A stretch of 64,000 bases of DNA from Gracilinanus agilis (Eukaryota), in NCBI RefSeq assembly GCF_016433145.1, contig NC_058130.1, positions 165,682,703 through 165,746,702 of the forward strand, in the 5' to 3' direction. The position numbers and the translations under genes were made by a program. This document shows, one piece after another, positions 4,223 to 63,361 of this stretch. Below the pieces are notes generated by a model, which was given only the letters and a program-made list of their open reading frames with translations, had not been told where the DNA came from and made no database searches. The stretch's first letter is position 1. Each line of letters starts with the position of its first letter.

Positions 4223-4627
4223 CTGTTTAAACTGTTCCTCATAAGTCCACTCATGGTGCTGGGGACCAGAAGGCTGGCTGGGGGTAGACACAGGTAGGCC
4301 TGGTCCTGGGCTAGGCTGGGGAGGTTGCCCCTGAGGCCTAGTCTCCTCTTCATCTTCTTCTTCCTCCTCTTCTTCCTCTTCATTTTCACCCTCTTCAGTG
4401 CCCCCCAGAGCCCCCTCCTCAGGAGACTGCTGGGCCCTGGAACCCACTGGATGGGATCGTTGGGGAGGCAGGGATGGGGGGATGGGATGAGGAAGTGGGG
4501 GTGGAACCCCACCTTGAGCTAGCCGGGCTGCCTGCTGCCTCTGTAGGGTCTCCATCACAGCTTCCAGCCGCAGTCCACCCCCAGGGGGTGCTCCAGGCAT
4601 AGGGCGGGGCATTGGGGAGAGGGCTGC
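4223..4627 (-). CDS. ARID3C: ARID3C coding exon 2 (conventional start METLQRQQ at 4555; acidic tract; HEWTYEEQFKQ)
   Basis: Acceptor ctcctgcag|GCA at 4627, donor CAG|gtagga at 4223; translation matches the ARID3C N-terminus. The part 4556-4627 is coding only if the upstream exon is used. Confidence 0.9.
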
Positions 4628-5548
4628 CTGCAGGAGCACAGGGGAGGGAATATTGTAGAATTGGAAAAACCAATGAGTTCTCTCCAAGATACCCACCCCC
4701 ACCCCCCAGGTCAGATCTTGCCCCCACCCTTCCAAAGACCTTTCCAATTTAGCCAACTCTGACAATTTTCCTGATCCTCAACTCTTCTGGAGCACTTCAT
4801 AGCCCCCACCCACCCACCAATAGGGTCTCCCTGTCAGCCCCAGACCCTCTTTCAGGGACCTCTCAGGGAATCACTCAGATTAAACTCCAATATACCATGC
4901 ACACACCCAACCCCTTCCTATGTTGGGCTTCCCTTCCCTAGTCCCCAATTCTCAGGGTCCTCCGGGCACAACGGGGAGAATTACAAGGAAAAAGAAGATG
5001 GAGAGGCAGAAATAAAGAGCTAGGAACCTGGAAAACTGAAAGAACCACGGAGAGACTATGAAACAGAGGGGGAGATAGAGAAAGGGGCAGAGATGGGAGG
5101 GACATCGACAGACAGGGAAAGAAAGAGACTGGGATAGGAACAGAGACAGAGACAGAGATAGGAGATGGGTAAAGGATAGAGACTGAGCCAAGAGAAAAAG
5201 ACCGAGAAAAGGATAGAGACAGAGGCCACAAGGGGGAAAAAATCTAGTCAAAAAGAGAAAGTGAAAAGGGACTGAGGGCAGGAGCTTTGGGGGAAACTAG
5301 GAGGAGGCGGACAGGGGAATTCCCTGGACATTAGTAGCTGGTCATCCAGGAAACTGGACACCTCAAGCATCCCCAACTCGGGTCACTTTGGATACTAATC
5401 TTTTCTCACACTGGTCACCACCTCTGACATTGGTCACACTGCACTCCTCGGACCCAGGTGTCCTCCTAACCCCTTGCTCCGGACTTTGAGCCCCCTCGGA
5501 CTAGTCCTTCTGACCCAGGACTCTGATCCTCTTGAACCCCGGACTCAC

Positions 5549-5587
5549 CAGAGCGCTGCGGGCGGCTGTCCCCAGGTTCTCCACCAT
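5549..5587 (-). CDS. ARID3C: Candidate upstream coding exon 1 of ARID3C (MVENLGTAARSAL)
   Basis: aaagcATGG (A at -3, G at +4), 39 nt, donor CTG|gtgagt; phase 0 joins in frame to the 4627 acceptor. Confidence 0.7.
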
Positions 5588-5923
5588 GCTTTAGCCGCCC
5601 CGCGCCCCACTCTGGCTCTCGATGCTCCCGGCTCCCGGCTGCAGGGTCTGGTTCCAGCTCCCCGTCCCCGCTTCTCTCTGGCTACTTCCTCTACCCCACC
5701 TGCCCTTCTCCCTCTGTCCGGCTCCCTCCCTTCCTCCTTCTAACCTTATCCCCTATCCCTTCTTAGTCTCCTTTCTCTCTTCTCTCTTTGGCCACTCGCG
5801 CCGGGTCGGAAGAACGACAGAGGCAGGGAGGGGCGGGCGAGTGGCGCTGTCCCGGGACCCAGGCGTCCGGGCCTCCCTTGGGGCGGGCGGGGCGGAGCAG
5901 ATGGTGTGCCGGCTGTCGCGCTC

Positions 5924-5928
<5 letters not shown>

Positions 5929-5984
<56 letters not shown>
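5929..5984. repeat. (CT)28 microsatellite
   Basis: Uninterrupted ct dinucleotide run counted from the sequence. Confidence 0.97.
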
Positions 5985-5987
<3 letters not shown>

Positions 5988-7531
5988 TCCCCCTCCCCCC
6001 CTCCCTCCCCCTGCTCTCTCTCTTTCGATATCTGGATCGTTCCTGCCCCAGTTTTTCCTCCTCTTTTCTGGCAACAAGTGTCCGCAGGCATCGCATCCCC
6101 AGGGCGGCCATTCGCCCTGCAGAGACTGGGAGAGAGTGTATGTGGCGCGGATAGGGTGCCTTGGGGTGGTTGGGGTCGAGGTGGGGGGCGGCGTACGGAG
6201 ACATTCTCCTTTAGAGAGGTGACACTATGTATGTAGGGAACATCATGAGAATGGCACCATGTTCCCTTAGACGGTGGGACTATAATGGTGTGGATGCCAT
6301 TGTGTGTCTGTGGCAAACAGCTAGATGAGTGTTTCCCTTAAAGCCCGGAGCGTTTCCCCATGCTTCACTGGAACAAACATTGCACCACACACCACCAACA
6401 CAAGCACACATTCATACAGGGGTGCACACACAGAGACAAACACACGTTCTGTACCCCCTCCTTGGTCATGATCACTGCGGCTGTCCTGCCGCAAAGCTGG
6501 GAATCATTCCCCTTGACACTGGAATGAAGATGGACAGAGACAGAGATATTCCTGGAGCCCAACCCAAATGCAGACATCTTTCCATTTCTGGTCCCCACCA
6601 AACTAAAGCAGTTTTCTCTCAATAGCTGCTCTGGGTCTGAATGACTTACTTAGGTATTGGCTCAGCTATCCACTTTCCTTTAGTTGCATAAACTAAAACA
6701 CTGGGATGCCTTAGGACAAAAATATACAATCTCCCTCTTGCATAATTGTGAAAAAATATATGCAAAAACGTATCCCATCAACTGTGACTCCCAAATCAGC
6801 ACATGCAACCCCAACCCGTCCCTAACCATCCACATAGGTATTTTCAGTGGTCTATTAATCATCTCCACCTGGATGTTGCAAGGTACCAGGTGTCCACAAA
6901 TGACTTCATCATATTCCTCCCAAATAGGCTGAAATATTTCCCTTATTTCTGTTGTCATCGCCCCCTTAAGTGCTAAACCTAGGAATTATCTCTGATTTTC
7001 CCAGACATTGCTATGCCCTTTCTTCTCCCCACTTAACCTCCATGTTGAATAAAATCCCAGAATCTCAGAAACTGTTTAGTCCAATCTAACTCTTTACAGA
7101 TATCCCAATATGTGGTCATCCAGCCTTTTGCCTGAAGCTTTCTAATGAGAGGCAACACACTATCTCCTGAGGCAGATTCTATTTTCAAAATTGTCAGGAA
7201 GATCTCCCTTATATCAAACCTAAATTCACCTCTTTGCACCTTCTACCCATTTACTCTCTCTGAGAGCAACCAGAACAAACCTAACCTGTCTTCCACATGA
7301 GAGACCTTCAAATATATGAAGAAGGCTATTATGCTTCCCCTTAAGCCTTCCTCAGGCTAAACAACTCTAGCTCCTTTGATCTCTTCTCCTATGGGGTATA
7401 TTCAAGGGCTTTTACTTTCCTGGTTACCCTCCTCCAGTTCTCCAGCTAGAGATATGAGATCCTACTAGATATTCTTCTGCAGATCCATGTCCTTCCATGT
7501 GGTACTTAGAACTAAACACAATACTGTATAG

Positions 7532-8289: not shown

Positions 8290-8467
8290 TTTTAACCCTT
8301 GTACTTCGGTGTATTGTCTCATAGGTGGAAGAGTGGTAAGGGTGGGCAATGGGGGTCAAGTGACTTGCCCAGGGTTACACAGCTGGGAAGTGGCTGAGGC
8401 CGGGTTTGAACCTAGGACCTCCTGTCTCTAGGCCTGACTCTCACTCCACTGAGCTACCCAGCTGCCC
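8290..8467 (-). mobile_element. Young opossum-type tRNA-derived CORE-SINE (SINE1_Mdo-like)
   Basis: Head ggggcagctgggtagctcagtgg, B-box ggttcaaac, A tail; approximate TSD caagatat..ttttt. Confidence 0.85.
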
Positions 8468-9147
8468 CAAGATATTTTTAAATAATAAAATTCAAAGTTG
8501 TTTTCATTTTCATTTTTCTTATCAGACTGATGCTAAAAATGATTATTGATTATCGATGTTTCTTGATATGTGGTTATTATAACCAAGCATAACCATGAAA
8601 GGGTTAAGAAAAATCTACTCCTTTCACTGAAGACCTGGGGAAAATATGGAAGTAGAATATTGCATACACTGTCAGACATGGTGGATACATTGGCTAGTTT
8701 TACTGAAATCCTTTAAAAAAAAATCTTTCTAGGGGACAGCTAAGTACCTCAGTAGATTGAGAACCAGGCCTAGAGATGGGAAAGTCCTGGATTCAAATCT
8801 GACCTCAGATACTCCCTAGCTGTGTGACTCTGGGCAAGTCACTTAACCCCCATTGCCTTGCTCTTACTGCTCTTTCTACAAGGATTCCTCACTGTATAGG
8901 GAAGTGAGTGGGGATATATTTGAGGAGAAATGTGATGTCAAAACAAAAGACCAATAAAAGTAAGGAAAATTTGTTTTTTTATTGTATTTTCCCCTTCAAG
9001 AACTGCCTATTAATATTATTTGACCATTTAATGAGAAGTGGTCCTTACTCATATTCATTTCTGTCAGTTTCTAATAGATTCTTAATTTTTATCATATAAT
9101 TATTTTATTCATCATCTCCTTTGCATTGCCCCACTATCAAACTGTGC

Positions 9148-9395: not shown

Positions 9396-10417
9396 TCAAC
9401 CTAGCAATCAACCCTCATCATTTCATACTTGGAATATTGAAATAGGGTCTCCCTACTTCCAGTCTCTTCTCTCTCCTATTCTTCTATACCAGATTAGTCT
9501 TCTTAATGAACAGAATTGATCAGTTCATTTTCCTCTTCAAAAATCAACTTTCCATTTCCACTCTTCCTAGACTAATAAATCTTTCATACTCCTGCCATAC
9601 TAATTTTCATTAGACATAGATCAGATTGATCATGTTACTTTTCTACTCAAAATTTTTCAGTGGCTCCCTCCTGCCCACCAATTAAAAGTTCCAAGTCTTT
9701 TGCCTACTATTCAAGGACTTCTATAAACTAGCATAACACTCCCTTTCTAGCTTTATCCTAAACTACAACTCTGTGAAGTCTACACTCTATCAAAATTACA
9801 TTTATTCTTTTTCTTTCTGCTCTCTACTCCATGCTTTCTGACTTTTATTTAATTGTTCCTGACTTCACTGTGCATGAATTATCTTCCTTCTCCCTTTTGA
9901 TTTGCTGAATACTTTAAATTTAAGGCATCCCTTAAATTTAGTTCAACTCAAGTCCTAAGCCTTCCTTCATTTCTCTCTGAAATTTTGTATTTGCCAATTA
10001 TTTCCTTGTGATCTTGAGCAAATTATTCCTCTGGATCCCAATGTTGGGGGAGGTTATTTTGTGGAACCGGTGACCCAGAACTGTAGCTCTGTGCTTATAT
10101 AGGGAGTTCAATTTTGAACATTTCTTTTATTTTTTTAATTAAAGAGAATTTTTTCAATCAACAAAAATTCAACTTCTCTCCAACCCATCTCCCTCTCCTC
10201 ACTGAAAAAGGAAGAAAAGATAAATCCCTGTTATAAATTTAATCAAGCAAAATAAAACCCCAAATTAGTTATGTCCAAAAAAAGTGTCTCAATCTGCATA
10301 TTTATACAGAGACAACAATATTGTATAGATAGACTTTGAATAGGAACTCTGATCAAAGTAATAACCAACCATGATTCCAGCGGACTGGATCACTTCTCTA
10401 TCAAAAATAGATATAGG

Positions 10418-10598
10418 GGGGGCAGCTGGGTAGCTCAGTGGAGTGAGAGTCAGGCCTAGAGACAGGAGGTCCTAGGTTCAAACCTGGCCTCAGCCACTTC
10501 CAGCTGTGTGACCCTGGGCAAGTCACTTGACCCCCATTGCCCACCCTTACCACTCTTCCACCTATGAGAAAATACACCGAAGTACAAGGGTTTTAAAA
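10418..10598 (+). mobile_element. Young SINE1_Mdo-like SINE inserted in an L1 3' fragment
   Basis: Full head to A tail; 15-bp TSD aaaaatagatatagg at 10403-10417 and 10599-10613. Confidence 0.9.
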
Positions 10599-11264
10599 AA
10601 AAATAGATATAGGTACATATCTACTAATTATGCTCCAAGGGTAGCATGTTTCATCATGAGTCCTCTGGAATCATGGTTGGTTATTACTTTGATCAGAGTT
10701 CCTATTCAAAGTCTATCTATACAGTATTGTTGTCTCTGTATAAACTGATCTCCTAGTTCTGCTTACTTCATTTAAGTCTTCCTAGGTTTCTCTGAAACCA
10801 CCTCCTTCCTCATTTCTTTTTTAAAAAATCCTTACTTTATGTCTTAGAATAGATCCTAAGGATCAGTTTCAAGGCATAAGAGTGGTAAGGGCTAGCCAAT
10901 AGGAGTTAAGTGACTTGTCCAGGGTCACACAACTAGGAATTGTCTGAGGCCAGATTTGAAGCCAGGACCTCCCATCTATGAGCCTGGCTCTCAATCTACT
11001 GAGCTTCCTATTTAGCCCCTATCAAGACTTTTTATAATGATCTCTTCTTGATCTGTTGTTTCTCCGGTCATTTATTTTGGCTATGGGATTGCATACATTT
11101 TTATCTATTTTTTCAATCTTTTGACTTCATTTTAATATTTCTTGTCACAAAAAGCAACTAACTTCTGTTGGGTTCATTCTAATTTTCAGGATGTTCGTCG
11201 ATAGGAAGGGTTGTGATTCAATTCTGGATCTATAGCTCAGTTCCCTTTCTATTCAATTATGTGT

Positions 11265-22586: not shown

Positions 22587-22588
<2 letters not shown>

Positions 22589-22634
<46 letters not shown>
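22589..22634. repeat. (CA)23 microsatellite
   Basis: Counted directly from the sequence. Confidence 0.95.
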
Positions 22635-22636
<2 letters not shown>

Positions 22637-28796: not shown

Positions 28797-28995
28797 TTTT
28801 TTTTTTTTTTTAATTTTATTTTAAACCCTTAACTTCTGTGTATTGACTTATAGGTGGAAGAGTGGTAAGGGTAGGCAATGGGGGCCAAGTGACTTGCCCA
28901 GGGTCACACAGCTGGGAAGTGTCTGAGGCCGGGTTTGAACCTAGGACCCGTCTCTAGGCCTGGCTCTCAATCCACTGAGCTACCCAGCTGCCCCC
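28797..28995 (-). mobile_element. Young SINE1_Mdo-like SINE
   Basis: 16-bp TSD tgaattttgaatttct at 28781-28796 and 28996-29011. Confidence 0.9.
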
Positions 28996-33644: not shown

Positions 33645-33790
33645 NNNNNNNNNNNNNNNNNNNNNNNNNNNNNNNNNNNNNNNNNNNNNNNNNNNNNNNN
33701 NNNNNNNNNNNNNNNNNNNNNNNNNNNNNNNNNNNNNNNNNNNNNNNNNNNNNNNNNNNNNNNNNNNNNNNNNNNNNNNNNNNNNNNNNN
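33645..33790. other. Assembly gap (146 N)
   Basis: Run of n characters, apparently inside an LTR-like element starting near 33599 (tgtaaggg). Confidence 0.99.
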
Positions 33791-43956: not shown

Positions 43957-44143
43957 GTTTTTGTTTTTAAACCCTTAAGTTCTGTGTATTGGTTCCTTGG
44001 TGGAAGAGTGGTAAGGGTGGGCAATGGGGGTCAAGTGACTTGCCCAGGGTCACACAGCTGGGAAGTGTCTGAGGCCGGATTTGAACCTAGGACCTCCTGT
44101 CTCTAGGCCTGACTCTCAATCCACTGAGCTACCCAGCTGCCCA
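43957..44143 (-). mobile_element. Young SINE1_Mdo-like SINE at the tail of a MAR1
   Basis: TSD aacaaacattt at 43946-43956 and 44146-44156. Confidence 0.85.
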
Positions 44144-46441
44144 AGAACAAACATTTATATAGTGCTTTAAGATTTGCAAAGTGCTTCACATCTATTATTT
44201 CATTTGGTCTTCATAACAACCCTATGAGGCAAGTGCTATTATTATCTCTTATTTCAGTTGCCTCAATATCCTCATCTATAAAATGGGGATAAATTATAAT
44301 AGTCCCTATCTTCTAGGATTGTTGGGAGGATCAAATGAGATCATATTTGCAAAGTGCTTTTCAAATCTTTAAATCTCATAAAAATGCTATTTTTATTATT
44401 TCACATGGAAGAAATTGAGGTAAATAGGAGGTAAGTGACTTGCCCAGGATTACATAGCTGTTAAGTGTCTGAAGTGAGATTCAATCTCAGACCTTCCTGA
44501 CTCCAATGCCGTTTACTCTAACCACTGCACCATCTAGCAGTATTAGGGTAACTGAATTTCTTCTTACCTTTTTCTCTTCCAGGATAGTTTCATTGAATCA
44601 GAACCGGACATGGAACAGATATAGAACTGGAAAGATATTTAGAGGTTAGCAAATCTAGCCCCCTCATTTTAGAGGTGAGAAAACTGAGTTTTGAATTGCC
44701 CCAGGAACACACAAATGGTAATTGTCTGAGGTAGGATTTGAACCCCAGCACTCATTCCATACCACAAAGAGTTTCTAGTATAATCTTTAGTATAGCTGTG
44801 GCCAGAATACCTCTTCCCCATTTAGCAATACACTAAAAACAGTTGGCAGTCTTCTCTGAAATCCTCTAGCAACCTTAATGTGGGCCCCAGGGCCCCTCAG
44901 AGCTTGTGGACAAAGATCAAGTAAATATATGCTCAGTTATAACCTTGTATCTTTGATTGTAGGGGCTGAGGGGGTGGGGTTGGAGGGAGGATGGGGAGAA
45001 GAACAAATAAATTTTATCTACTTTTCTTTCCCAGTGACCCCCAAGGGTCCTCACTCTATTTTTTTTCTTTGTAAAAATGTATAAGAAGAGATCCTGATTT
45101 GAATTTTAAATCTGGCTCTGGTATGAGCTTGACCTTGGGACAAGTTAGTTACTTTCTTATGGGCCTCAACTTTCTCTTCTATAAGATGAAGAGGCTGGAC
45201 TAGATTATTTTCAAGTTTTTTTCTGGCTCTAAAAGTCTATGAGTATGTTTCTGCCTTTCTTAATTTTAAACTGGGGCTCATATTTTGCTTTTTGGGATGG
45301 TGTAGCCCCAGTTGACCAATTGAGACTTTCCTATTAATGGAACAGCTTTAAAGTTCCAGCTCTACTCTGCATACCACTTCCTTTGGAAGACCAGCTCTGA
45401 GAACCTTGGAATTTTCCCCTAAGAATCTTCCTCAGTTTGGGAGTAAACTGTATGCAATCTATTCATGGCCATTAAGGATCTTAAATCTGTTCTCATTCTC
45501 CTGGATCTCTCTCCAACAGTTAATACTATTCTAGAGCCACTTCTTCAAACTATCCAAGTAATTTCCCTAACTTCCTGTTTGGACCATGTTGCTCCTTTGC
45601 TCAAAAAAACTTTCCAGCATCTCCCTATTTCTAACTGAATAAAGTATATATGCTGGATTCTGGCATGCAAAATCCTCTATAATTTAGTTCCAACATACCT
45701 TTCCAGTTGTTCACTTATTCTGCAGTCCAGCCAAATCGGTTTACTTGATAACCTAAACTTTAGACTCCTAAAGTTTCTCATTTTACAACCCATTTTTGTT
45801 TACAACACCCCCTATACTTGAGATGGATTCTTTCCCTGTCTTTTTTTTTTTTTAACCCTTACTTTCTGTCTTAGTAACAATTCTAAGACAGAAGGGCAAG
45901 GGCCAAGCAAATTAAGTTACTTGCCCAAGGTCACACAGCTAGGAAGTGTCTGAAGCCAAATTTGAACTCAGGTCTGCCCAACTCGGGCCTGACACTTTAT
46001 TCACAGTGCCACCTTGCTGCCCGCTTCCCTATCTTTTTTGAAGCCCTTCCCTTTCTTCAAGGTCTTGATCTGGCACAAGCCTTTTCTGACATCCTCTGTC
46101 CAGACTCATCTTTTTAAAATAGCACTTTTTCTAAATCCCTCCTCAGTGCACAACATGTTATCTATCTTTTGGGTCATCTTCACTTGTGCATATGTCTTTT
46201 TCTTATTAGATTATGAGACTTTGAAGTCAAACAGTCGACTTTGTGCTAAGTCCTTTCTTTACAAAGAAAAACTTAAAACAGTCACTGCTTTCAAGCAGTT
46301 TATACTGTAATATAGGAAATAACATATGCATAAATAGATATGTATGAGATGTATACAGAGTTCATATAAGATAACCTTAGAAGGGAAGGCACTAGAAGCT
46401 GGGAGAAATAAAAAAGGCAAAATATGTTATATCTATCCATG

Positions 46442-46442
<1 letters not shown>

Positions 46443-46506
<64 letters not shown>
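46443..46506. repeat. (TCTA)16 tetranucleotide microsatellite
   Basis: Counted directly; followed by AT-rich low-complexity sequence to about 46800. Confidence 0.95.
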
Positions 46507-46511
<5 letters not shown>

Positions 46512-49915: not shown

Positions 49916-50136
49916 TGAGGTGCACCTCTTATCTATCCCAAGCTTTAGGAGGGGCTCATTTAGGACATACCTTCATTCCCCACATCAGAAACTGAGCCTT
50001 CCACTTAGGAGTCAGTGGTTTCCTCTTTTTTCCCCCTTTGCCCCCAACTCTGTTGATAGATTATGAATGCCAGGAAAACTAAGCAAAGGCAGGACCAGCT
50101 CTGGGCCCTCAAAAGGCCCTTTCCCCCTTCCCCTGA

Positions 50137-50388
<252 letters not shown>

Positions 50389-50487
50389 TGACATCCTCAG
50401 ATGAGCCCTACCTATTCCCTCTAGTCTATTCCTCTGGAACTTTCCTCTGTCCCTTTGGTTATTTGGAGGGGCCTAGGGAGGTGTTTA

Positions 50488-51000
50488 GGGGCAGCTGGAT
50501 GGCTCAGTGGATACAGTGCTGGGCCTAGAGACAGGAAGACCTTGAGTTCAAATCTAGCCTCAGACACTTCTAGCTGTATGACCCCAGACAAGTTTGGACT
50601 TAATTTCGTTTTGCCTTGATCCACTGGAGGAGGAAATGACAATTCCTGTATCTTTGCCAAGAAAACCCCATGGACAGTATGGTTCTCTGGGTCACAGAGT
50701 TGGGCATGATTGAAAAACACCCATAGGGAAGTGGTAGTAGCATTGTAGTAGAAAAGCTAAATGGTATAATGGATATAGAATACCAAGCTTGGGCTAGAAA
50801 GACTTATCTTCCTGAGTTCAAATATGGTCTCAGGTACTAGCTGTATGATCCTGGACAAGTTACTCAACCATCTTTGCCTCAGTTTCCTCATCTGTAAATG
50901 TGCTGGAGTAGGAATGGACAAACCACTCCATTATCTTTGCCATGAAAACCCCCAATGGGGGTCACAAAGAGTCTGACAACTGAAAAAACTAAACAATAAA
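50488..51000 (+). mobile_element. Two tandem MAR1-type SINEs in GALT intron 8
   Basis: tRNA-derived heads and RTE-like ctttgcc(a/at)agaaaacccc tails at about 50488-50718 and 50750-51000. Confidence 0.7.
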
Positions 51001-51138
51001 AGTATGATTGTAGGCCTTTTTGGCTTTGGGGAATGGGGTCCTGTTTTCTAGGCAAGGAGCAGAGCAGTTAGAGCTTGGATTCTGAGTTTTAAATGTCTTG
51101 GATTCTGAATTTACAATTCTAGGCTCTGTGGGTCCTAG

Positions 51139-51297
<159 letters not shown>

Positions 51298-51668
51298 TAA
51301 ACCCCAGAGAGAACCGAGACCTGGGTGTCAGCTCTAGCTGCCTTTTGAGTCCTGTTGAATTTTGCCCGGCAAAGACCACATCTCCCATCAAACCTTGCAA
51401 AGCTATTCTGTTAATACTGTAAGGCATACTGGGAGTTGTGGTTTCTGCTGGACCCAATACTTCAGCTAGGTATTGCAGAGCAGGACATGCATGCTGGGAG
51501 TTGTGGTCTTTGGATGCCATTATCTCACTACATTTCCCATCATCCTGTCCTGCATTCTGTTTGCTGAGGCAAAACATGTTGGGAGTTTGTTCTGAGATGA
51601 GGCTTAGTTCCTTAAAACATGCTCAGAAAAGCAGTCCTAAGCTTTCCATGGAGCAGTGCATGTTTAAA

Positions 51669-51705
<37 letters not shown>

Positions 51706-52406
51706 GACAGCTAGATGGCTCAGTAAATAGAGCTAGATAGGAAGTCTTGATTTGATTGTAGCCTCAGCTACTTCATAGCTATGTGACCCTGGGCAAATTC
51801 ACTTAACCCCAGTTACCTAGCCCTTACTGCTCTTCTGCATTGGAATCAATATTGGAATCAATTCTAAAACAGAAGGTAAGGGTTTTTAAAAAATAATATT
51901 TTAAAAACATGGTAGTCACTTATTTTTACATCATCCTTTTTTCAGAATATATCCTCCTTTTTCTTAGGTCATTTTGTTTATAAAGAATTCTTACTATTAT
52001 TAATTATTAATTTTTGTTTTATTTTAATTAGTATTAATATTTTATATATCTATATAATATGTTATATAATTTATAAAGAATTATTAATAAAGAATTTTGA
52101 AAGAAAAAGTCCATTTAGTAAAAAGCCAACCAACCAATGTAAAAACTGAATTGGACAGAGTGTTTATCTAATTAACATGCTCTATTGATAGTTCTTCCCC
52201 TTGCAAAGAAGAGGAGGATATACAGTTTTTCAGCTTCTCTAGGACCAAGCTTCATCATTGTAATTGTGTCCCATTCATTGTGGGTTTTTGTGCTTTCCAT
52301 TTTTACTATTGCATTAAGTGTGTTGTTTTCCTGAATCTGCTTTCTTCATTCCCCAATAATTCATCTAAGTCCTGGAGCAAACTGTTTATGTGCTGCAGAG
52401 GAGTAA

Positions 52407-52610
<204 letters not shown>

Positions 52611-52766
52611 TGATATTTAGTAACAACCTCTTCCATCACTCCAAGGGTCAGTCTGTGAAACTACTGGGAGGGGGCAGTAATAGAGAAAGGAAGAAGAGGA
52701 TCCCGGGAGATTGGGAAGGCTCTTCAGTGCTTGTGCTCCCCTCCTCCACTCTTTCCCTCTTCTTAG

Positions 52767-52832
52767 GCTGCACAGCGATTGAGGGCGCTACCAGAAGATC
52801 ATTATAGGCTTCGACCGAAGGATGCTGCCTGA
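52767..52832 (+). CDS. GALT: GALT exon 11 (coding part, with stop)
   Basis: AAQRLRALPEDHYRLRPKDAA*; eleven exons total 1119 nt = 372 aa plus stop. Confidence 0.95.
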   Translation, partial: AAQRLRALPEDHYRLRPKDAA

Positions 52833-52924
52833 CTGTGGCCCCCAGAAGGAGTCCAAAATTAGAAATGCTTCGAAGCTGTCAGCTCCCTTATCTTACAGGA
52901 TGGAGGAGGGGTCTTGAGCTGGCA

Positions 52925-52930
52925 AATAAA
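52925..52930 (+). terminator. GALT polyadenylation signal AATAAA
   Basis: About 90 nt after the stop, followed by cctttgtccctgtct. Confidence 0.75.
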
Positions 52931-54529
52931 TCCTTTGTCCCTGTCTCCCAAGGCTGCTCTGAAGGGTTGGGGGGTGGGCTATTTGCTCTTGCCTCTGGTC
53001 TGAGGATTGGCTGGAGTTGAGGGGAACCCTGTATCTTGGGGGCCAGCCTCACCTCAGCTTTGGTGGACGGTAATCAAATCCTAGCCATGCTGGAGCCAGG
53101 TTCTGTTAAATCTTGGCCCTGTATCAGCCCTTCAGGGAGGGGGCCCAGACAAGCCGGCGGCGGTGCAGCTCTGCTGGCAGACACTTCACATGGGTGTTCA
53201 CATGGCTCAGAGCTTCTCCAGCCCTCCCACGTGCTGCAGGCATACTGATACACAGATCAGTTATGAGCCTGAAGGGGGCCACATACCCTGCTGTGTGTCT
53301 CTGGCAGCCTGCCCTGAAGGGGAGTATGGGGGGTCGGGGTGGGGGAGGATTCCAGACTTTTACAAAGCACTTTCACGATAACTTCACTGAATCCTTAGGA
53401 CAGCTCGGTGAGGAAGGGAGAACAGGAAATATGAGTGTGCATTTACACAAATGGCCAGTCCAGGGCTCAAACTTCTGATTTGTGGGCAGGGTGGTGTGTG
53501 TGTGGGGAAAAATCCTTGGATTAGGTGTTGTTAGTCTGAATCCCAACCCTGCCACTTAGTAGTAGTAATTCTAGACATGCAGAAAGGAGGGGTAGGGGTT
53601 GGTTTTCCTCATCAGTAAAATGGGGAGGGGTTTTGAGGAAGTGATTATCTTTTAAGAAAATCATACCATTTGTTCCCGCTATGCTATGAGCCCTTTCCAA
53701 GTCTCAAGTTCTGGCTCTGCTTCAGGAGCCAACTCAACTTGGATTTTGGGAAAGGAATTTTACCTCCTTAGTTCTTGGTTTTCTCATGTAAAATGAGTTT
53801 CTTGTGCTAAATTGGGGGTTCTTAACAAGGATCTGGATAGATTTCAGGGGGCCTGAACTTGGAAGAAAAGATACATTTATTTTCATCAACCTCAGCTGAA
53901 ATGTAGGATTTCCCTTAATTATGAATGTGGACAGGTCGGGGTCCGCAGCCATAACCAGATTGCCAGAGGGGTTCAGAATATAAAATAAGTCCCCCATGAC
54001 TTAGGAACGGTATCTAGGCTCCTTTTCAGCTTTGACATCCAAGGATGGATTTTAGGACCATTTCTCTCCTGCACCATATTTGCCTCATTTCTCTGCGGGG
54101 CACTCTTTGTTAATCATACCATAAAGTAGAGGGAGTAGGAAATGGGATTTCTTTGAGGTTTGAACTCTGGGGAGGAAGATTATTGAAACCCCTTCAAATC
54201 CCCCTGCCTCACTACACTTGGCCACTTCATTATCTCGAGCAGCTGCCCCATCTCAACCAAGTTCCCTCATCAACTTGCAGGAATGTTTCAGCCTTCCCAC
54301 CCCCTCATCTTGTCAGCAGTCATAGGTTGGTATAACACCCCACTGGGGCTGCTCGGTATGAAAGGGAAAACGGGATGGGTAGTCCCTTCATCCTTCCCGT
54401 AATCTCTAATCAGGGGACATACCTTCTGGCTAAGGTCCTCCCGAACCTCCAGAATTCCAACTCTCCCTGTATCTGAATCTGGAATCAACTCAGGTGCCTC
54501 GGACCATTCCCTCCCTGGGCAGCCCCCTT

Positions 54530-54802
54530 TCCTCTATCGCCAATTACCGGACTCCCGCCCTCCCAGCACTCCGCTGCCTCTCCCGCTCCAGGGACAGGAA
54601 GTGTCCGGGCAGGGGTGGGGGCCTGGGTGGAGGCCGGTGATTGGCAGTACGGGACTCCAATGGGCCTCAGAGCCCACCCCTTCACCCCCATTCCCCAATT
54701 CCGCCGGGACCGGAGGGCTCGATCCGGCCCCGCTCTGCCCTGGGGGGCGGGGGGCCGGAGGCTGTGTAGCGGAGGAGGGAGCGGGCGGCGAGGCCGCGTA
54801 AG
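54530..54802 (+). promoter_or_regulatory. IL11RA: IL11RA CpG-island promoter and non-coding exon 1a
   Basis: CCAAT/ATTGG at 54640-54644 and 54657-54661, CAGGAAGTG ETS motif, GC boxes; donor aag|gtgagg after 54802. Confidence 0.7.
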
Positions 54803-56494
54803 GTGAGGAGCGGTCTGGTGGTGCGGGGGGCACGGTGTAAACGGGGCCGCCCCTCGGGCCCAGTTGCGCTGCTGTTCTCTCGGCTGTGTGGAGAGTGCGA
54901 GCGTGTCTGCGTGTCTCCAGTCCAGTCTGGAGAGTGTGTTTGGGGTGTTAGAGAGCGGGTCTATCTTCCCACCCAGCCCAAAGTCCCAGGGCTCAGACTG
55001 CCTCTACGTGCCGGCTTGTCTCTTCTCGGTGTCTTCGCGTCTATTCTGTCACTTCCTTTTCCCTGTGTCTGATTCCCTAGGATCTGAGTTTCCCAATTGA
55101 CATTTGAAGGATACTGGGGAAAGGAAAGAGGATCTTGTTTATGATGGGGGAAATGGGAAGTCTGGGACCCAACTGGCGAGGGGGCTGCGATCGGAGAGTG
55201 CGAGCCAAACTATGTTATGCGTAAATGTGTCCACTTGAGAGTGTGCCAATGGGGATGAGTGGGTGAGCCTGGGTCTGCGTTAGTATATGCGTGTGGGTCC
55301 AGATTGGCACGCCAATGACCAGAGACAGAGACACAGAGAGAGAGACAGAGAGAGAAAACGAGAGCGCGACAGCCGGCACAGCAGAGAGAGAGAAGAGTAA
55401 ACTGGGGAGCCCAGGAGAGGAGGGAGAAGGGCTTGAGCTAGAACTGAGGGGCCTGAAGAGGGGTTTGGAGGGAGGGCGGGCCTGCGACTAGCCAGAGTTT
55501 CCTGAGGGAGGAGTTTAGGGGATGGATTATCAGCCAAACTAGAGCTCTCGGTCCACTTTTCTCAGCCTCAGGCCTTCCCCCTTCCTTCTCACCCTCTGGG
55601 GAGCAGCCCTGCCCAGCTGTGGAGAAACATCTGGAGTTGGAGGACTGAGGAGAGGGAAAGGGGAGGTTTTGGGGGGAGTCTGTGTCTCTTTGTCTCTCTC
55701 TGTGATCTGATCATTATCTGCATAGAAACAGTGCATGCCAGCATTTGTTTATGCTGGGCTATCCATGTGGAAGGAGGGGTATGGCTGCCTGGAATTGCTT
55801 ATTTGTTTCTCTGTTGTCTGTTCATCCCCGGGTTCTTTTGAGTGCCAGGGTATCTGTGAATGTGTGTCTGTGCACATGCTTGTTTGTTTCTATGTAACCA
55901 AGTGCTTATGTATATTGGTGCTTGTCTGTACACATCTTTGTGTCTGCATTTGTGTGCCTGCGTGTCATATGGTTTCATTTGTGCAGATCTGTTTGTGCAC
56001 TGCCCTCTCTGAAATCCACTGTGACAAGCCAACATCCCATCTGTTTGGGGTTGGGTGGGTGATAGAACATGTGAACTGTTTTACACTCCCCCTTCTGCCC
56101 TTCAGTACACACATACATACGATGGGCACATGCATGAACCCATCCATGTGGGCACACAGAAACCCTTACTAGATTCTTCACAGACTCATTCCCAACATTC
56201 TTGTTCCAAGAGTTGGGGCACAGAGGGAAAGGGTAGACCTGAGGCTTCCTTTCCAGCCCGTAGGATTGGGTTGGGGGTAGGGAGTGTCCTGGCTGTGGAA
56301 TTGGTCCATTCCTTAGCTCTGGCCTTACCCCGAGGGCTAGGGGTAGGAGGAAGGAGGAGGGAAGGGGGCCTGGCTGAGGGGCAGTCACTTTCTGCCAGGG
56401 AATGGTGGGGGGGAAGGGGGTGGGAATTGGAGGAGCCAGGCTAAGGGAAGTAGGGAGAGGGGGGCTGCCTTAAACTCCCAGAGCTCAGAGCTGA

Positions 56495-56574
56495 GAACAG
56501 AAGCAGAGCAGGAGCTGGCTGAGGGTTGGAGGAAGGAGGCAGGATTATGGACACAGGGAGCTCCAGGACCTAAG
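56495..56574 (+). other. IL11RA: Candidate alternative non-coding first exon (1b) of IL11RA with short uORF
   Basis: G-rich upstream sequence, cttaaa TATA-like box near 56470, donor aag|gtaggg after 56574; uORF 56547-56573. The 5' boundary is a guess. Confidence 0.55.
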
Positions 56575-57918
56575 GTAGGGGGGGAATAAAAAACAGGGGT
56601 GAGGGGGTGCAATGTGATAGAAGTCCTATATCCCACTCCATGGGGAAGGGATCTGCATACACACACACTCAAACACAAATACACAGATGTGTATGCACAT
56701 GTAGAGAGACACATGCATTTACATATATCCAGTGCCCTATATCTGAAACTGGTCTTTCCTCTGGACTTCTCTTTTCTCTACCCCCCTTCCCCACTCATCT
56801 TTACTACCCTCAATTCACCTTTCTGCTGTAGCTCCCAAATCTTGCTTCCCTGTCTCCATTCTGTATTCCTCTTTCCTTAGGGTACCCCCTCCCTTCCCCC
56901 AATCACCCTTTTGTCTCTGGGCCTCTGGCAGCAGCTGTTGCATCTGGATCTAGTTAGTCCTTTACCTCCCCTGCTTCCCCTCCCTCTCCCTAAGTCTCTA
57001 ATGCTCCTTCCTTCAGTGGATCCTGAAGAAAACTAAGAAAAGAGGGTGACAGGGTTGCCCAGGGTCGGTTTAGAACCAGATTGGCCCAGAATGGGAGAAG
57101 ATGAAGTGCCCATGATGGTTGGCTTGAGCAGGGTTGTGGTCAGAATGTGGCTGCACCCCGATGCTCTCCGTCCAATCTGTGGACACTCCTTATCCCTATC
57201 TGACAGACCATGGGTTGGGGATGGGGGTAGAGATGCCTGGGTGTCCAGATTATTTCCCAAAGACATCAGTTTCCTAGGTTGAAGGGTTCAAACATCCATT
57301 CTTTCTTAAGTGGGTCTGGCTATTTTTGGGGTGCAGGCATCAAGAAGAAAAGGGTTAACAGTGGAGAGAGGCCAAGTGAGAGTAGAGGGGGGCCACTGCC
57401 ATAGCAGTGCCAAATTCTGAGCTAGCCCCAGTGCCAAGGGTTGTCAGGAGGAGGTAAGGGTCTGGCACGGACCCCAACGCCTCCGGCTTTTGTTCTCGGC
57501 CCCAAGCCCAGAACTGGGGCTCCTAGGGGCTGGGTTGGGGGGTAGGGGTGGTGGTGAAGAGGGGGTAGGACTACTATGAGTATATGAGTCTGCCTCAGTG
57601 TACAAGCATATATCAAATATGTACATGTGTATTTTTGTGAATTTGTGTTTCTGCCTTTATATATGTGAGTGTGGCAGTACTCTTGTGTGTGTCATTGCAT
57701 GTATGCCAGTTCCTTTGTATGCTCTGTCCCTTTGCCCCAGAAAATGAAAGTTCCTCTCAGTTTTCTACTTTCGACCTTAGTTTCCCTCCTGGGAACTGAT
57801 CAGATCCTGGACAGATCGGAGGAAGGAATGATACCTAGGAGAAAATGGCACTCCTGGTGGCTGGGGTCCCAGAGAGTCCCTTCTCTGGAGATGACCCTAT
57901 ACCTCATTCTCTTTCCAG

Positions 57919-58018
57919 ATGAGCAGCAGTTGCTCTGGGCTGGGCAGGGTCCTGGTGACTGTGGCTGCAGCCCTAGTGTCTGTCTCTTCCATTGACCCTG
58001 AGACCTGGGGTCCCCCAG
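57919..58018 (+). CDS. IL11RA: IL11RA first coding exon (signal peptide)
   Basis: ctttccag|ATG; 100 nt; [33 protein letters not shown]. Confidence 0.96.
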
Positions 58019-58271
58019 GTGAGAAAGCATGGCTCAGATCAGGGTCCCCAACTACTGACCTAATGGAGTTATCTGACCTTTGAGTCAGGATGAAACTGGG
58101 GCCCCCAACCTGTGTTCCCTAGGAATGTGACCCTAGAACCTGAGAGCTGATGCCCAATGCCTAGAATCCCCAGCAACCACCATTCTCTGATACGGGAGGG
58201 AATTGGGGGAGGGCTCAAGAGTCAGCATGGGGAGGCTTTCTCCTCAGAATTCATACCATCCCCACTGGCAG

Positions 58272-58332
58272 GGGTCCAGTACGGGCAACTTGGAGAGACC
58301 ATTGTGCTTTTGTGTCCAGGAGTGACTCCTGG
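58272..58332 (+). CDS. IL11RA: IL11RA coding exon 2
   Basis: 61 nt; GVQYGQLGETIVLLCPGVTPG. Confidence 0.95.
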
Positions 58333-58647
58333 GTAAGTGTCTCAACTCACTTATCTCTTGTTAATCCTGATTGTCCTCCAGCTTCCATCATAACTTTCTC
58401 TTATCTTCATGGAATGAAGGGGTGGGATATGGAGGCAGGAGCTGAGGGAACGGGGTGGGCTCGGGTAGAGGATGCATTGACTTCTGCACTTGACCTTTTA
58501 TTCCTTGTCCAGCACCTAGCATGGTGCCTGGCACATAGTAGGTGCTTAAAGTTTATACCTTGATTCTCCTAACTTCACCCATGCTCCTTCTCCAACTCCA
58601 TCCTGCTCTGTCTTCAACCCTTCCCCACCCATACCTTATATCTTCAG

Positions 58648-58826
58648 GACACTGGTTTCCTGGCACCGAGCAGATGGCCATGCACTCCAGGGGACATCGA
58701 GGTCAGAGTTAGGGTTGGGACGACAGGAACTGGTCCTGGAGCAGGTAGATAGCCAAGACGAGGGCACCTATATCTGTCAATCCCAGGATGGGGATACCAG
58801 AGGCTCTGTGACGCTTCAACTAGGCT
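58648..58826 (+). CDS. IL11RA: IL11RA coding exon 3 (Ig-like domain)
   Basis: 179 nt; [10 protein letters not shown]...[33 protein letters not shown]. Confidence 0.95.
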
Positions 58827-59008
58827 GTGAGTGGTGGTAATTGTAATAACCTAAAGGATGGCATGAGTGACCCTGATGGGGAGGTGGGGATGGAGTTGAG
58901 TGGGACTTCAAAGGACTGGAAAGAGGTGGGACCATAGCAAGGAGGAATTTCGGAGTGGAGTGATTGATGCCTCCCTGGCATCCCCCAGCTCCTGTCCCAT
59001 CCCCACAG

Positions 59009-59123
59009 ACCCCCCATCTCGTCCCATGGTTTCCTGTCGGGCATCAGACTATGAGAATTTCTCCTGTTCCTGGAGCCCCAGCCGGGTCAGTGGCCTCCCC
59101 ACACGATACATTACTTCCTACAG
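59009..59123 (+). CDS. IL11RA: IL11RA coding exon 4 (cytokine-binding D2)
   Basis: 115 nt; [39 protein letters not shown]. Confidence 0.97.
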
Positions 59124-59330
59124 GTGCGTGAGCATGGATGGAATGGCCCCGGGGGGTACGGGGAAAAGGGAAAATAGGGGGTAGACAGACTACCTCTGGG
59201 ACCTCATTATGAAGGGTCTTCAGGTAGGGAAATGCCAATGAGGAAGTTGTAGTGACTGGGGAGATTTCCCTTCCTCTGGCAGCCCAGAGGTATAACCAAG
59301 GTATCCCTTCTCTCCTTCCTTCTTGCACAG

Positions 59331-59363
59331 GAAGAAAATCATTCTTGGAACAGAAAGAGGAAG
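59331..59363 (+). CDS. IL11RA: IL11RA coding exon 5 (33-nt micro-exon)
   Basis: tgcacag|G...AG|gtaag; KKIILGTERGR. Confidence 0.9.
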
Positions 59364-59518
59364 GTAAGAAGCCCCAATCCTCTCTTATTCCCTGGTGGAC
59401 TCTGTGGAGAAGGGTGATATGGGCAGAGAGTTTCACAGGCTGAGCTGAGCCTTTATGTGGAGTCCCTAGTGTGACTGGTATTCCTGATGCTCACTGTGCC
59501 CTTCCCCCTAATATTTAG

Positions 59519-59685
59519 GCCAGCGCTATCTGCAGAGCCCCAACCGTGCTTAGCAGAACTTCCTGGGGCTACCCGGTGTGTGGTCCATGGTTCTGAGTTC
59601 TGGAGCCAATATCGGATTAATGTGACCGAGGTGAACCCCCTGGGGGCCAGTGCCCGCCTACTGGATGTGAGCATGCAAAGTATCT
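59519..59685 (+). CDS. IL11RA: IL11RA coding exon 6; gene continues beyond the window
   Basis: 167 nt; [55 protein letters not shown]. Confidence 0.96.
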
Positions 59686-60284
59686 GTGAGTAAGCCCCTT
59701 GGATGCCACCTAAAATATTGTCTTCTCTCACAAAACATCTGTGAATGACACCCCACAAATGCTGACCCTGGTTAATACACAGAACATCCATGAATAAGCA
59801 AGCCTATTACTCCGACCCTGATCACCAACAACACATTTAAGAGTGACCTCAGTGACTAATATAGCATGGAGTGACCTCATGTGATTCCCTCAAAAACTGA
59901 CACTCCCAGATTTATAGATGTAAAGCTAGTAGGGGCCTTAGAAGCCATCAGAGTCCAACCCCCTCATTTTAAAGATGAGGAAACTGAGGCTTAGAGAGGA
60001 TAAATGTTTTTTTTCTAGGGTTCCCCAGCTAGGAAGTGTTTGAGACAGGATTTGAAATCATGTCTTCCTAATTCTAAATCCAGAATTCTGCTGATACCTA
60101 ATTGTCTTAACTCTGTCATCACACACAGTCTCCTGTCCATTATCCCCTAGCATTGACTTTTTTAACCCTTACCTTCTGTCTTAGAATTGATACCAAGTAT
60201 TGGTTCCAAGGCAGATGAGCCAATAAGGGCTAGGTAATTGGGGTTAAGTGACTTGCCTGGGGTCACACAGCTAGGAAGTGTCTT

Positions 60285-60468
60285 TTTTTTTTTTAACCCT
60301 TAACTTCTGTGTATTGGCTCTTAGGTGGAAGAGTGGTAAGGGTGGGCAATGGGGGTCAAGTGACTTGCCCAGGGACACACAGCTGGGAAGTGTCTGAGGC
60401 CGGATTTGAACCTAGGACCTCTGGTCTCTAGGCCTGACTCTCAATCCACTGAGCTACCCAGCTGCCCC
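60285..60468 (-). mobile_element. Young SINE nested within an older SINE (about 60160-60540)
   Basis: 14-bp TSD ctaggaagtgtctt at 60271-60284 and 60469-60482. Confidence 0.9.
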
Positions 60469-61527
60469 CTAGGAAGTGTCTTGATGCCAGATTTAAACTC
60501 GGGTTCCTCTGACTCTGGGCCTGGCATGCTATCCATTGTGCATTGATTTCTATTAGGAACCATCTAAACATTGCCCCGTCCCAGTGCATCTATGAATGAT
60601 CCTTTCATACTATTCCCATAAAAAGACAGATACTGCAGGCATACTAACCAATTATTCTTCAGAAAATGTCAGCAATCTTCCTACGATTCTTACATGATGA
60701 TTAGATTACCAATACCCACCCACAAGGGACCCCTAGGACTCCTCCTTGCAAAAACTGACCTTATCAGGATAGTATGTTTTTGGATAATTCTCCTCTGACC
60801 TCCATATTAGCCTTTATGATTCTCCTCAGACACTGATCCTTCCACTGACTCCATTGGTACACAACATATTCTTTTACCTTCTGTTTTGGAATCAGTATTG
60901 TGTATTGGTTCCAGGGCAGAAGAATGGTAAAGGCTAGGCAATGGGGGTTAAATGACTTGCCCAGGGTCACATAGCTAGGAAGTATCCGAGGCCAGCTTTG
61001 AATCCAGAAACTCCCATCTCTGGATCTGGCTTAGTCCACTGAGCCACCTAGCTGCTCCTACATTATATCTTCTTAACTGACCCCAACTTGTCAAAATATT
61101 GACCTCTTAGTGAACCCTAAACTACATCTCACCTTCACTGGATGCTCCTGGAGCAATACTCACTGCTGCCAAGCCCTAGGCAGGAGCTGGCTGACTTTGG
61201 CATCCCCCCCACCTCTTTTCTCTCTGCTTAAGGGTTCTTATCACTGCAACCACACCAGGCCACTCACTAGGTCACTTTGTAAGGCCCTAAGTTCTGTAGT
61301 GATTTAGATTCTTCCTTTTATAGACCCCTTACAAGATGGAGGTTTCATAGGGAAGGGTTACTAATAAATGAAAGTGAATAAAATCAAACCACAAGCATAC
61401 CCCAAATAGACTGAGTTATGGAGGACAGGGATTTGATCCTCTGTTTATTCCTGTTGTGAGTCCTACCTTGGTTCCTGGATAAAGACAAAAAAAACTAAAT
61501 ATTTAAGTGCCTACTATTTAAGGGCAA

Positions 61528-63171: not shown

Positions 63172-63361
63172 TTTTTTTTTTTTTTAAACCCTTAACTTCT
63201 GTGTATTGGCTCAGGTGGAAGAGTGGTAAGGATGGGCAGTGGGGGTCAAGTTGACTTGCCCAGGGTCACACAGCTGGGAAGTGTCTGAGGCCAGATTTGA
63301 ACCTAGGACCTCTGGTCTCTAGGCCTGATTCTCAAACCACTGAGCTACCCAGCTGTCCCCA
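63172..63361 (-). mobile_element. Young SINE1_Mdo-like SINE
   Basis: 15-bp TSD ccttaattacattct at 63157-63171 and 63362-63376. Confidence 0.9.

What the first reader, a model, noticed from the sequence alone, without database searches (positions are those of the whole stretch)
5905..5984. Exact 24-nt element next to a GA repeat, shared in inverted orientation between the ARID3C promoter and IL11RA intron 1
Seen: the reverse complement of 5905-5928 is AACGAGAGCGCGACAGCCGGCACA, identical to 55357-55380, about 49 kb away. In both places it is immediately preceded by a (GA)-rich run and sits in promoter-like context: GC boxes here, a double-CCAAT palindrome there. It retains four CpGs and resembles none of the SINE/LINE/LTR copies in the window. 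A naive uniform-base estimate for any 24-nt match in 64 kb is about 1e-5 to 1e-4. Inference: options are a long shared TF site co-regulating the two outer genes of the cluster, a microsatellite-associated micro-element or template-switch product, or inverted anchors bracketing SIGMAR1-GALT. An assembly artefact at GA repeats is also possible.
Basis: partly seen in the sequence, partly recalled or inferred. Interest (0 to 1): 0.75.

Follow-up and report, generated by a model that had tools for sequence, protein, structure and literature searches.

The report
Short DNA copy between two GA-repeats
Two gene-start regions 49 kb apart in a small American opossum share an exact 24-letter stretch beside a GA repeat; it is most likely the scar of one DNA-repair or replication slip that copied a repeat's flank into another repeat, and nothing shows it is a shared control element.

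Summary
The reverse complement of 5905-5928 equals 55357-55380 exactly. It is the only such pair in the window (0 expected), and the only exact match of 24 nt or more that is not a SINE. Similarity runs on into the GA run (60 nt, 92%) and stops dead at the other end.

Best reading (about 0.5): a one-off templated copy. A broken or stalled 3' end in the GA-rich tract upstream of IL11RA paired with the perfect (GA)29/(TC)29 tract upstream of ARID3C. It copied about 24 nt of that tract's flank and rejoined.

Evidence for site 1 as donor and site 2 as acceptor:
- At site 2 the 24-mer has the same purine tract on both sides, and its four CpGs are isolated.
- At site 1 it continues a dense CpG/GC-box promoter run.

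A read-derived contig of the same species carries the site-2 copy joined to its unique right flank, so that copy is not a polishing artefact.

The inversion-anchor idea is rejected because gene order is the usual one. A regulatory role is untested. This is an ordinary kind of mutation scar, of low to moderate interest.

The parts
5905..5928 (-). Copy 1 of the 24-mer, proposed native sequence and template. It lies between the (GA)29 tract and the GC boxes upstream of ARID3C.
   Evidence: Its CpGs (5910, 5917, 5919, 5925) continue a dense CpG run at 5797-5893.
5928..5985 (.). Perfect (TC)29 on the + strand, i.e. (GA)29 on the ARID3C strand. Proposed pairing site for the invading GA-rich 3' end.
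   Evidence: TRF: 29 copies, 100% matches; the only pure GA/TC run of 12 nt or more in the window.
5826..5896 (.). GC-box cluster (GGGGCGGG-type) next to copy 1, inside the CpG island at about 5500-6250.
   Evidence: Read directly. CpG observed/expected is 0.64-0.65.
5548..5587 (-). ARID3C upstream coding exon (MVENLGTAARSAL). It places copy 1 about 320 nt upstream.
   Evidence: six-frame match. (alignment with the annotated Monodelphis and Antechinus ARID3C N-termini).
55320..55356 (+). Imperfect GA-rich tract (CAGAGAGAGAGA-type units) to the left of copy 2. Its last 9 nt plus the 24-mer match site 1, with one mismatch at 55356.
55357..55380 (+). Copy 2 of the 24-mer, proposed templated insertion.
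   Evidence: Its four CpGs are isolated; the nearest others are at 55310 and 55477. Positions 55367-55380 plus the right flank are present without differences in a read-derived contig of the same species (X1 record 2).
55381..55398 (+). The purine tract resumes (GCAGAGAGAGAGAAGAG) right after copy 2. This is the proposed other side of the interrupted tract.
55243..55316 (.). CCAAT boxes (one single, one inverted pair) just upstream of the site-2 tract, at the 3' edge of the CpG island at about 54300-55400.
   Evidence: Read directly.

Best explanation
This is a one-off templated duplication, a mutation scar rather than an element.

Proposed steps:
1. A double-strand break or stalled nascent strand arose inside the GA-rich tract between GALT and IL11RA (site 2).
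2. It left a 3' end reading ...GAGAGAGA.
3. That end paired with the complementary strand of the long perfect (GA)29/(TC)29 tract upstream of ARID3C, 49 kb away on the same chromosome.
4. The end was extended out of the repeat into its unique flank for about 24 nt.
5. It dissociated and was rejoined to the other side of the site-2 tract.

The process would be synthesis-dependent strand annealing at an ectopic microsatellite, or polymerase template switching of the MMBIR or Pol-theta type. The inverted orientation follows from which strand carries the pyrimidine run at site 1.

Shown: the exact copy, the entry through the GA run, the abrupt exit, the lack of any other homology, and the reality of the site-2 copy in reads.

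Inferred: the mechanism, the direction (site 1 to site 2), and the young age.
For: -: the pair is exact, unique in the window and far beyond chance.
- homology consists of the GA run plus the 24-mer (60 nt, 91.7%) and ends sharply after GGCACA. Nothing else within +/-800 nt is similar.
- at site 2 the 24-mer is flanked on both sides by the same purine tract. Its 4 CpGs are an isolated cluster, 47 and 103 nt from the nearest others. At site 1 it continues an 11-CpG-per-100-nt promoter run.
- site 1 has the only long perfect GA/TC tract in the window (58 nt), enough homology for strand invasion.
- a contig built from reads of the same species (depth about 24) runs from about 55329 through 55367-56100 with zero differences. 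The site-2 copy is therefore joined to its own right flank in real reads.
- local divergence from the sister opossum is 7.5%. Zero differences in 24 nt fits a copy about as old as that split or younger (P = 0.16 at that age, 0.02 at twice it).
- Literature: templated inserts copied from sites more than 1 kb away or from other chromosomes are a known minority (2-3%) of Pol-theta repair products (PMC5068794). MMBIR gives inverted templated insertions flanked by microhomology (PMC8421209).
Against: - No ancestral, insert-free state of site 2 was seen. In the sister species the interval is 244 nt instead of 105 nt, and its letters were not shown, so direction and age are inferred only.
- Genome-wide copy number is unknown.
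- A 49-kb template distance is unusual for short templated inserts, which mostly come from within about 100 bp.
- The exit junction shows at most 2-4 nt of possible microhomology (CA/ACA) and cannot be pinned down.
- One mismatch (55356) sits just inside the presumed priming region.
- Site 1 was not checked in reads.
Confidence: 0.5

Rival explanations
1. Both copies belong to an unrecognised dispersed micro-repeat tied to GA/CT microsatellites. One candidate is the extreme 3' end of a retroposon with a (CT)n tail, as in the microsatellite 'families' with shared flanks described in Lepidoptera.
For: - The unit reads 24-mer followed by (CT)n on one strand, like a retroposon 3' end plus its tail.
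- Microsatellite families with similar flanks created by transposons, including RTE elements, are documented (PMC7043130).
- This genome has young RTE elements according to another note of the scan (unchecked).
Against: - There are only two copies in 64 kb and no diverged copies at up to 3 mismatches in 19 or 24 nt.
- Both copies end at exactly the same base, which independent 5' truncations would not give.
- A 62% GC sequence with four intact CpGs is untypical for a retroposon tail.
- No hit in Rfam or in viral or metagenome contigs, although those collections are not the right ones for this question.
- No repeat library was on hand.
Confidence: 0.2
2. The 24-mer, whatever its origin, is a long protein-binding site kept by selection in two CpG-island promoters. 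It would give ARID3C and IL11RA a shared regulator or pair the two sites in a chromatin loop.
For: - Both copies lie in or at the edge of CpG islands next to GC or CCAAT boxes.
- Both have the same orientation (GA run, then 24-mer) relative to the downstream gene.
- All four CpGs are intact in both copies.
Against: - Same orientation is a 1-in-2 chance.
- Exactness is equally explained by youth.
- No conservation data could be obtained.
- By eye the sequence does not fit the CTCF core. This rests on my own recollection of the motif, not on a tool.
- At site 2 the copy sits inside a fast-changing microsatellite interval that differs in length (105 vs 244 nt) from the sister species.
Confidence: 0.1
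3. One copy is an assembly or polishing artefact created where reads with GA repeats were misplaced.
For: - GA repeats attract mis-mapped reads during polishing.
- Site 1 borders a 58-nt perfect repeat and was not checked against reads.
- The best-holding run (X1) may be the very sample the assembly came from.
Against: - A de novo contig from reads (X1 record 2, mean word depth 23.6) contains 55367-55380 joined to 720 nt of site-2-specific right flank with no differences. It also extends 38 letters further left.
- At site 1 the 24-mer is compositionally continuous with its promoter flank.
Confidence: 0.05
4. The inverted copies are duplications left at the two breakpoints of a 49-kb inversion made by staggered breaks.
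For: The copies are inverted and bracket SIGMAR1 and GALT.
Against: The order and strands are ARID3C(-), SIGMAR1(-), GALT(+), IL11RA(+). This equals the arrangement I know from the human locus, so no inversion separates this genome from eutherians unless it happened twice.
Confidence: 0.03

Closest known systems
Templated insertions from polymerase theta-mediated end joining (TMEJ 'delins')
   Same: A short insert (tens of nt) identical to sequence elsewhere. It is primed by microhomology and has an abrupt end where synthesis stopped. A single mismatch near the priming end fits an error-prone polymerase. Per PMC5068794, 2-3% of such inserts come from more than 1 kb away or from other chromosomes.
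   Different: Most TMEJ templates lie within about 20 bp of the break, and average inserts are about 10 nt. Here the template is 49 kb away, and priming homology may be a whole microsatellite rather than 1-2 nt.
MMBIR/FoSTeS templated insertions
   Same: An inverted copy of a template on the same chromosome with microhomology at the junction. The template switch happens at difficult-to-replicate DNA (PMC8421209).
   Different: The events catalogued there were searched only within 100 bp of the insertion. Disease-linked FoSTeS segments are usually much longer. No accompanying rearrangement is seen here.
Ectopic synthesis-dependent strand annealing / short-tract non-allelic gene conversion
   Same: A broken end invades a non-allelic homologous tract (here GA/TC repeats), copies beyond it and returns. 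The donor is left unchanged.
   Different: Homology exists on one side only, so the return must have been by end joining rather than annealing. This is my inference; no paper on microsatellite-primed ectopic copying was retrieved.
Microsatellite families with shared flanking regions (Lepidoptera; transposon-borne)
   Same: Different microsatellite loci share an almost identical flank on one side.
   Different: Those are large families spread by transposons. Here only two copies are known, the shared flank is 24 nt with identical ends, and no transposon features are visible.

Membership tests
Templated insertion (TMEJ / MMBIR / ectopic SDSA footprint) | Inserted letters identical or nearly identical to a template elsewhere in the genome | tested here: met
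   24/24 identical, and 33/34 when the adjoining GA letters are counted.
Templated insertion (TMEJ / MMBIR / ectopic SDSA footprint) | Microhomology between the primer end and the template at the entry junction | tested here: met
   The GA run adjoins the 24-mer at both sites. Nine further matching letters follow after one mismatch.
Templated insertion (TMEJ / MMBIR / ectopic SDSA footprint) | Microhomology at the exit (rejoining) junction | tested here: inconclusive
   The copy ends in ...CACA and the tract contains ACAG/CACAG units. Without the ancestral sequence the junction cannot be placed.
Templated insertion (TMEJ / MMBIR / ectopic SDSA footprint) | An insert-free ancestral or allelic state of the acceptor site | not testable with these tools
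Dispersed repeat / transposon fragment | Many copies across the genome with independent flanks | not testable with these tools
   Only the 64-kb window is searchable. It holds two copies and no diverged ones.
Dispersed repeat / transposon fragment | Similarity to a known repeat or RNA family | tested here: not met
   No Rfam match at either site. No similarity to the SINE copies of the window. No Repbase/Dfam-type library was available, so the test is partial.
Inversion-breakpoint duplications | The segment between the copies is inverted relative to related genomes | tested here: not met
   Gene order and strands equal the human arrangement as I know it. No marsupial outgroup was compared.
Shared transcription-factor or insulator site | Conservation above the flanks in related species, and a match to a known binding motif | not tested
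   No motif library or orthologous sequence was available. The only motif comparison was by eye and from memory.

The most novel reading that the evidence does not exclude
The GA-run-plus-24-mer is a portable promoter module. It was copied from the ARID3C promoter into the IL11RA promoter or first intron. It has since been kept because it binds a long-footprint factor, such as a multi-zinc-finger protein, that couples or loops together the two outer genes of this conserved cluster.
Probability: 0.06. Interest if true: 0.6.

Novelty: new member of a known kind. Interest (0 to 1): 0.25.

Why it matters
If the reading is right, this is a clean germline, fixed example of a microsatellite acting as the landing pad for a long-range (49 kb) templated copy between two CpG-island promoters. 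Such events are well described in mutagenised worms, yeast and tumours but are rarely pointed out in normal vertebrate genomes. They are one way in which short promoter fragments, with their CpGs and binding sites, can be seeded into another gene's control region. As a single instance without functional or comparative data it is a curiosity, not a discovery.

Tried and rejected
- **Orthologous loci.** I searched ARID3C coding exon 1 by reference (window:4223-4555:-), then a full-length elephant ARID3C. Only single exons were searched, by reference.
- **Read laying.** The tool masks 55313-55366, so the first 10 nt of copy 2 and the left tract were not scored. The sister-species contig bridges the site, but its 244-nt interval was not printed.
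- **Exact scans of the 24-mer.** JGI metagenome contigs and viral contigs gave 0 hits. These collections are not expected to hold opossum DNA.
- **Rfam.** Nothing at gathering level for the whole window. Only sub-threshold noise at the two sites.
- **Bacterial promoter/terminator scan.** Irrelevant for a mammal, and disregarded.
- **Inversion-breakpoint idea.** Rejected on gene order.
- **CTCF-like and ZBED1/hDREF-like resemblance.** Considered only from memory; the fit is poor or partial and was not tested.
- **Human contigs.** None were fetched or compared.

Full report
**The observation**

On the + strand, 5905-5928 reads TGTGCCGGCTGTCGCGCTCTCGTT. Its reverse complement is identical to 55357-55380. 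Allowing three mismatches, these are the only two hits in the 64-kb window, and 100 dinucleotide-preserving shuffles gave none. The 19-nt non-repetitive core behaves the same way.

An all-against-all search for exact repeats of 18 nt or more shows this is the only pair of 24 nt or more that is not between SINE copies. Sixty second-order Markov simulations of the window gave longest chance repeats of 15-21 nt. The analytic expectation for a 24-nt pair is about 2e-5. So the match is real and reflects common descent.

**Anatomy**

Sensitive alignment of +/-800 nt around both sites finds one meaningful segment: 60 nt at 91.7%. It consists of the 24-mer plus the adjoining GA run, and it stops sharply after ...GGCACA.

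- Site 1: the GA run is a perfect (TC)29 at 5928-5985, the only long pure GA/TC run in the window. The 24-mer leads straight into GC boxes.
- Site 2: the 24-mer sits inside an imperfect purine tract that is present on both sides, at 55320-55356 and 55381-55398.
- CpG pattern: the four CpGs of the 24-mer continue a dense CpG run at site 1 (11 per 100 nt). At site 2 they form an isolated cluster, with the nearest CpGs 47 nt upstream and 103 nt downstream.

**Gene context**

- ARID3C lies on the minus strand. Its ARID exon is at 401-610, its main coding exon has an ATG at 4555, and an upstream coding exon (MVENLGTAARSAL) has its ATG at 5587. That exon matches the N-terminus of the annotated Monodelphis and Antechinus proteins.
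- Site 1 is therefore about 320 nt upstream of the first coding exon, inside a CpG island. 'ARID3C promoter' is fair.
- SIGMAR1 is on the minus strand at 17.3-20.5 kb.
- GALT is on the plus strand and ends near an AATAAA at 52925.
- The IL11RA signal-peptide exon starts at 57919.
- Site 2 lies at the 3' edge of the CpG island between GALT and IL11RA, just after the CCAAT boxes. Whether that is promoter, exon 1 or intron 1 is open.
- The order and strands of the four genes equal the human arrangement as I know it. The two inverted copies are therefore not the footprint of an inversion.

**Species and reads**

ARID3C exon 1 is 96% identical to Monodelphis domestica, 88% to Antechinus and 85% to wombat. 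The window thus comes from an American opossum other than M. domestica. Other notes of the scan call it a small opossum.

One public run (X1, organism A) holds 97% of the sampled words of 50001-60000. Runs of other organisms hold 7-9%.

I laid contigs of four runs on 54600-56100. The tool masks 55313-55366.

- In X1, one contig (record 2, mean word depth 23.6) covers 55367-56100 without a single difference. It has 38 more letters on its left, so it starts near 55329.
- Another X1 contig (record 1) ends near 55349.
- Hence the last 14 nt of copy 2 are joined to 720 nt of site-2-specific flank in a de novo assembly of reads. This rules out a mis-mapping or polishing artefact for that copy. X1 may be the same animal as the assembly, so this is not an independent individual.
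- In organism B a single contig bridges the site. Its interval corresponding to 55308-55412 is 244 nt instead of 105 nt.
- Organism C shares nearly all of B's differences. Directly left of the conserved GAAGAGT..ACTGGGG it shows GGAGGAGGAGG where the window has GCAGAGAGAGA.
- The letters further left were not shown, so presence or absence of the 24-mer in the sister species remains unknown.
- Local substitution divergence between A and B is 90/1206 = 7.5%. At that divergence two neutral 24-mers would be identical with P = 0.16, and at twice that divergence with P = 0.02. The copy is probably about as old as that split or younger, unless it is under constraint.

**Most likely mechanism (inferred)**

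A break or stalled 3' end inside the site-2 purine tract, reading ...GAGAGAGA, paired with the pyrimidine strand of the 58-nt perfect tract at site 1. It was extended from 5927 down to 5905, then released and rejoined to the rest of the site-2 tract. The geometry works only in the observed inverted orientation.

The single mismatch at 55356 lies just inside the priming region. It may be a polymerase error or a later change.

Precedents:
- Pol-theta repair products include templated inserts. Per PMC5068794, 2-3% come from more than 1 kb away or from other chromosomes, and about one in three templated inserts carries an error.
- MMBIR yields inverted templated insertions with microhomology (PMC8421209).
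- That long GA/TC mirror repeats stall forks and break is established knowledge. I did not retrieve a paper for it here.

The direction, site 1 to site 2, rests on three indirect arguments:
- The tract is present on both sides of the 24-mer at site 2.
- The 24-mer is continuous with the CpG run at site 1 and isolated from other CpGs at site 2.
- Site 1 has the long perfect tract.

**Rivals**

- A microsatellite-borne micro-repeat or retroposon tail (0.2) cannot be excluded without a genome-wide count. The identical ends of the two copies, their CpG richness and the absence of diverged copies speak against it.
- A selected regulatory site (0.1) is compatible with the positions and shared orientation, but nothing tests it.
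- Artefact (0.05) remains only for site 1.
- Inversion footprint (0.03) is disfavoured by gene order.

- No whole-genome or repeat-library search exists among the tools.
- Spliced gene models were not joined; only single exons were searched, by reference.

**Verdict**

This is a real, non-chance, probably young duplicate of 24-33 nt between two GA-repeat-bearing CpG islands. It is best read as a templated-insertion scar. It is a new instance of a known kind of event, with an untested and a priori unlikely regulatory meaning.

Noticed in passing
window 10301-10386 and 10659-10744: An 86-nt inverted repeat, 98% complementary, with arms 272 nt apart that enclose a SINE copy. It may be a fold-back duplication or a MITE-like structure.
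   Followed up: partly
window 55308-55412 versus run X2 record 17: The purine-tract interval at the IL11RA CpG-island edge is 105 nt here but 244 nt in the sister opossum. There it includes a (GGA)n run, so this is a fast-evolving microsatellite in a promoter-proximal position.
   Followed up: partly
window 5548-5587 (-) and 4223-4555 (-): ARID3C has a short upstream coding exon (MVENLGTAARSAL) spliced onto ...AALSPMPRP. An in-frame METLQRQQ start further down corresponds to the eutherian start (MEALQRQQ). The marsupial models thus carry an N-terminal extension.
   Followed up: partly
window 33645-33790: A run of 146 N.
   Followed up: no
window 22588-22635 and 46430-46509: A perfect (AC)24 and a (TATC)20 microsatellite. 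Neither shares flanks with any other locus in the window.
   Followed up: no
window 8294-8470, 10418-10571, 28819-28990, 43999-44145, 60295-60470, 63182-63300: A young SINE family with exact shared stretches of up to 66 nt between copies. It accounts for every other long exact repeat in the window.
   Followed up: no
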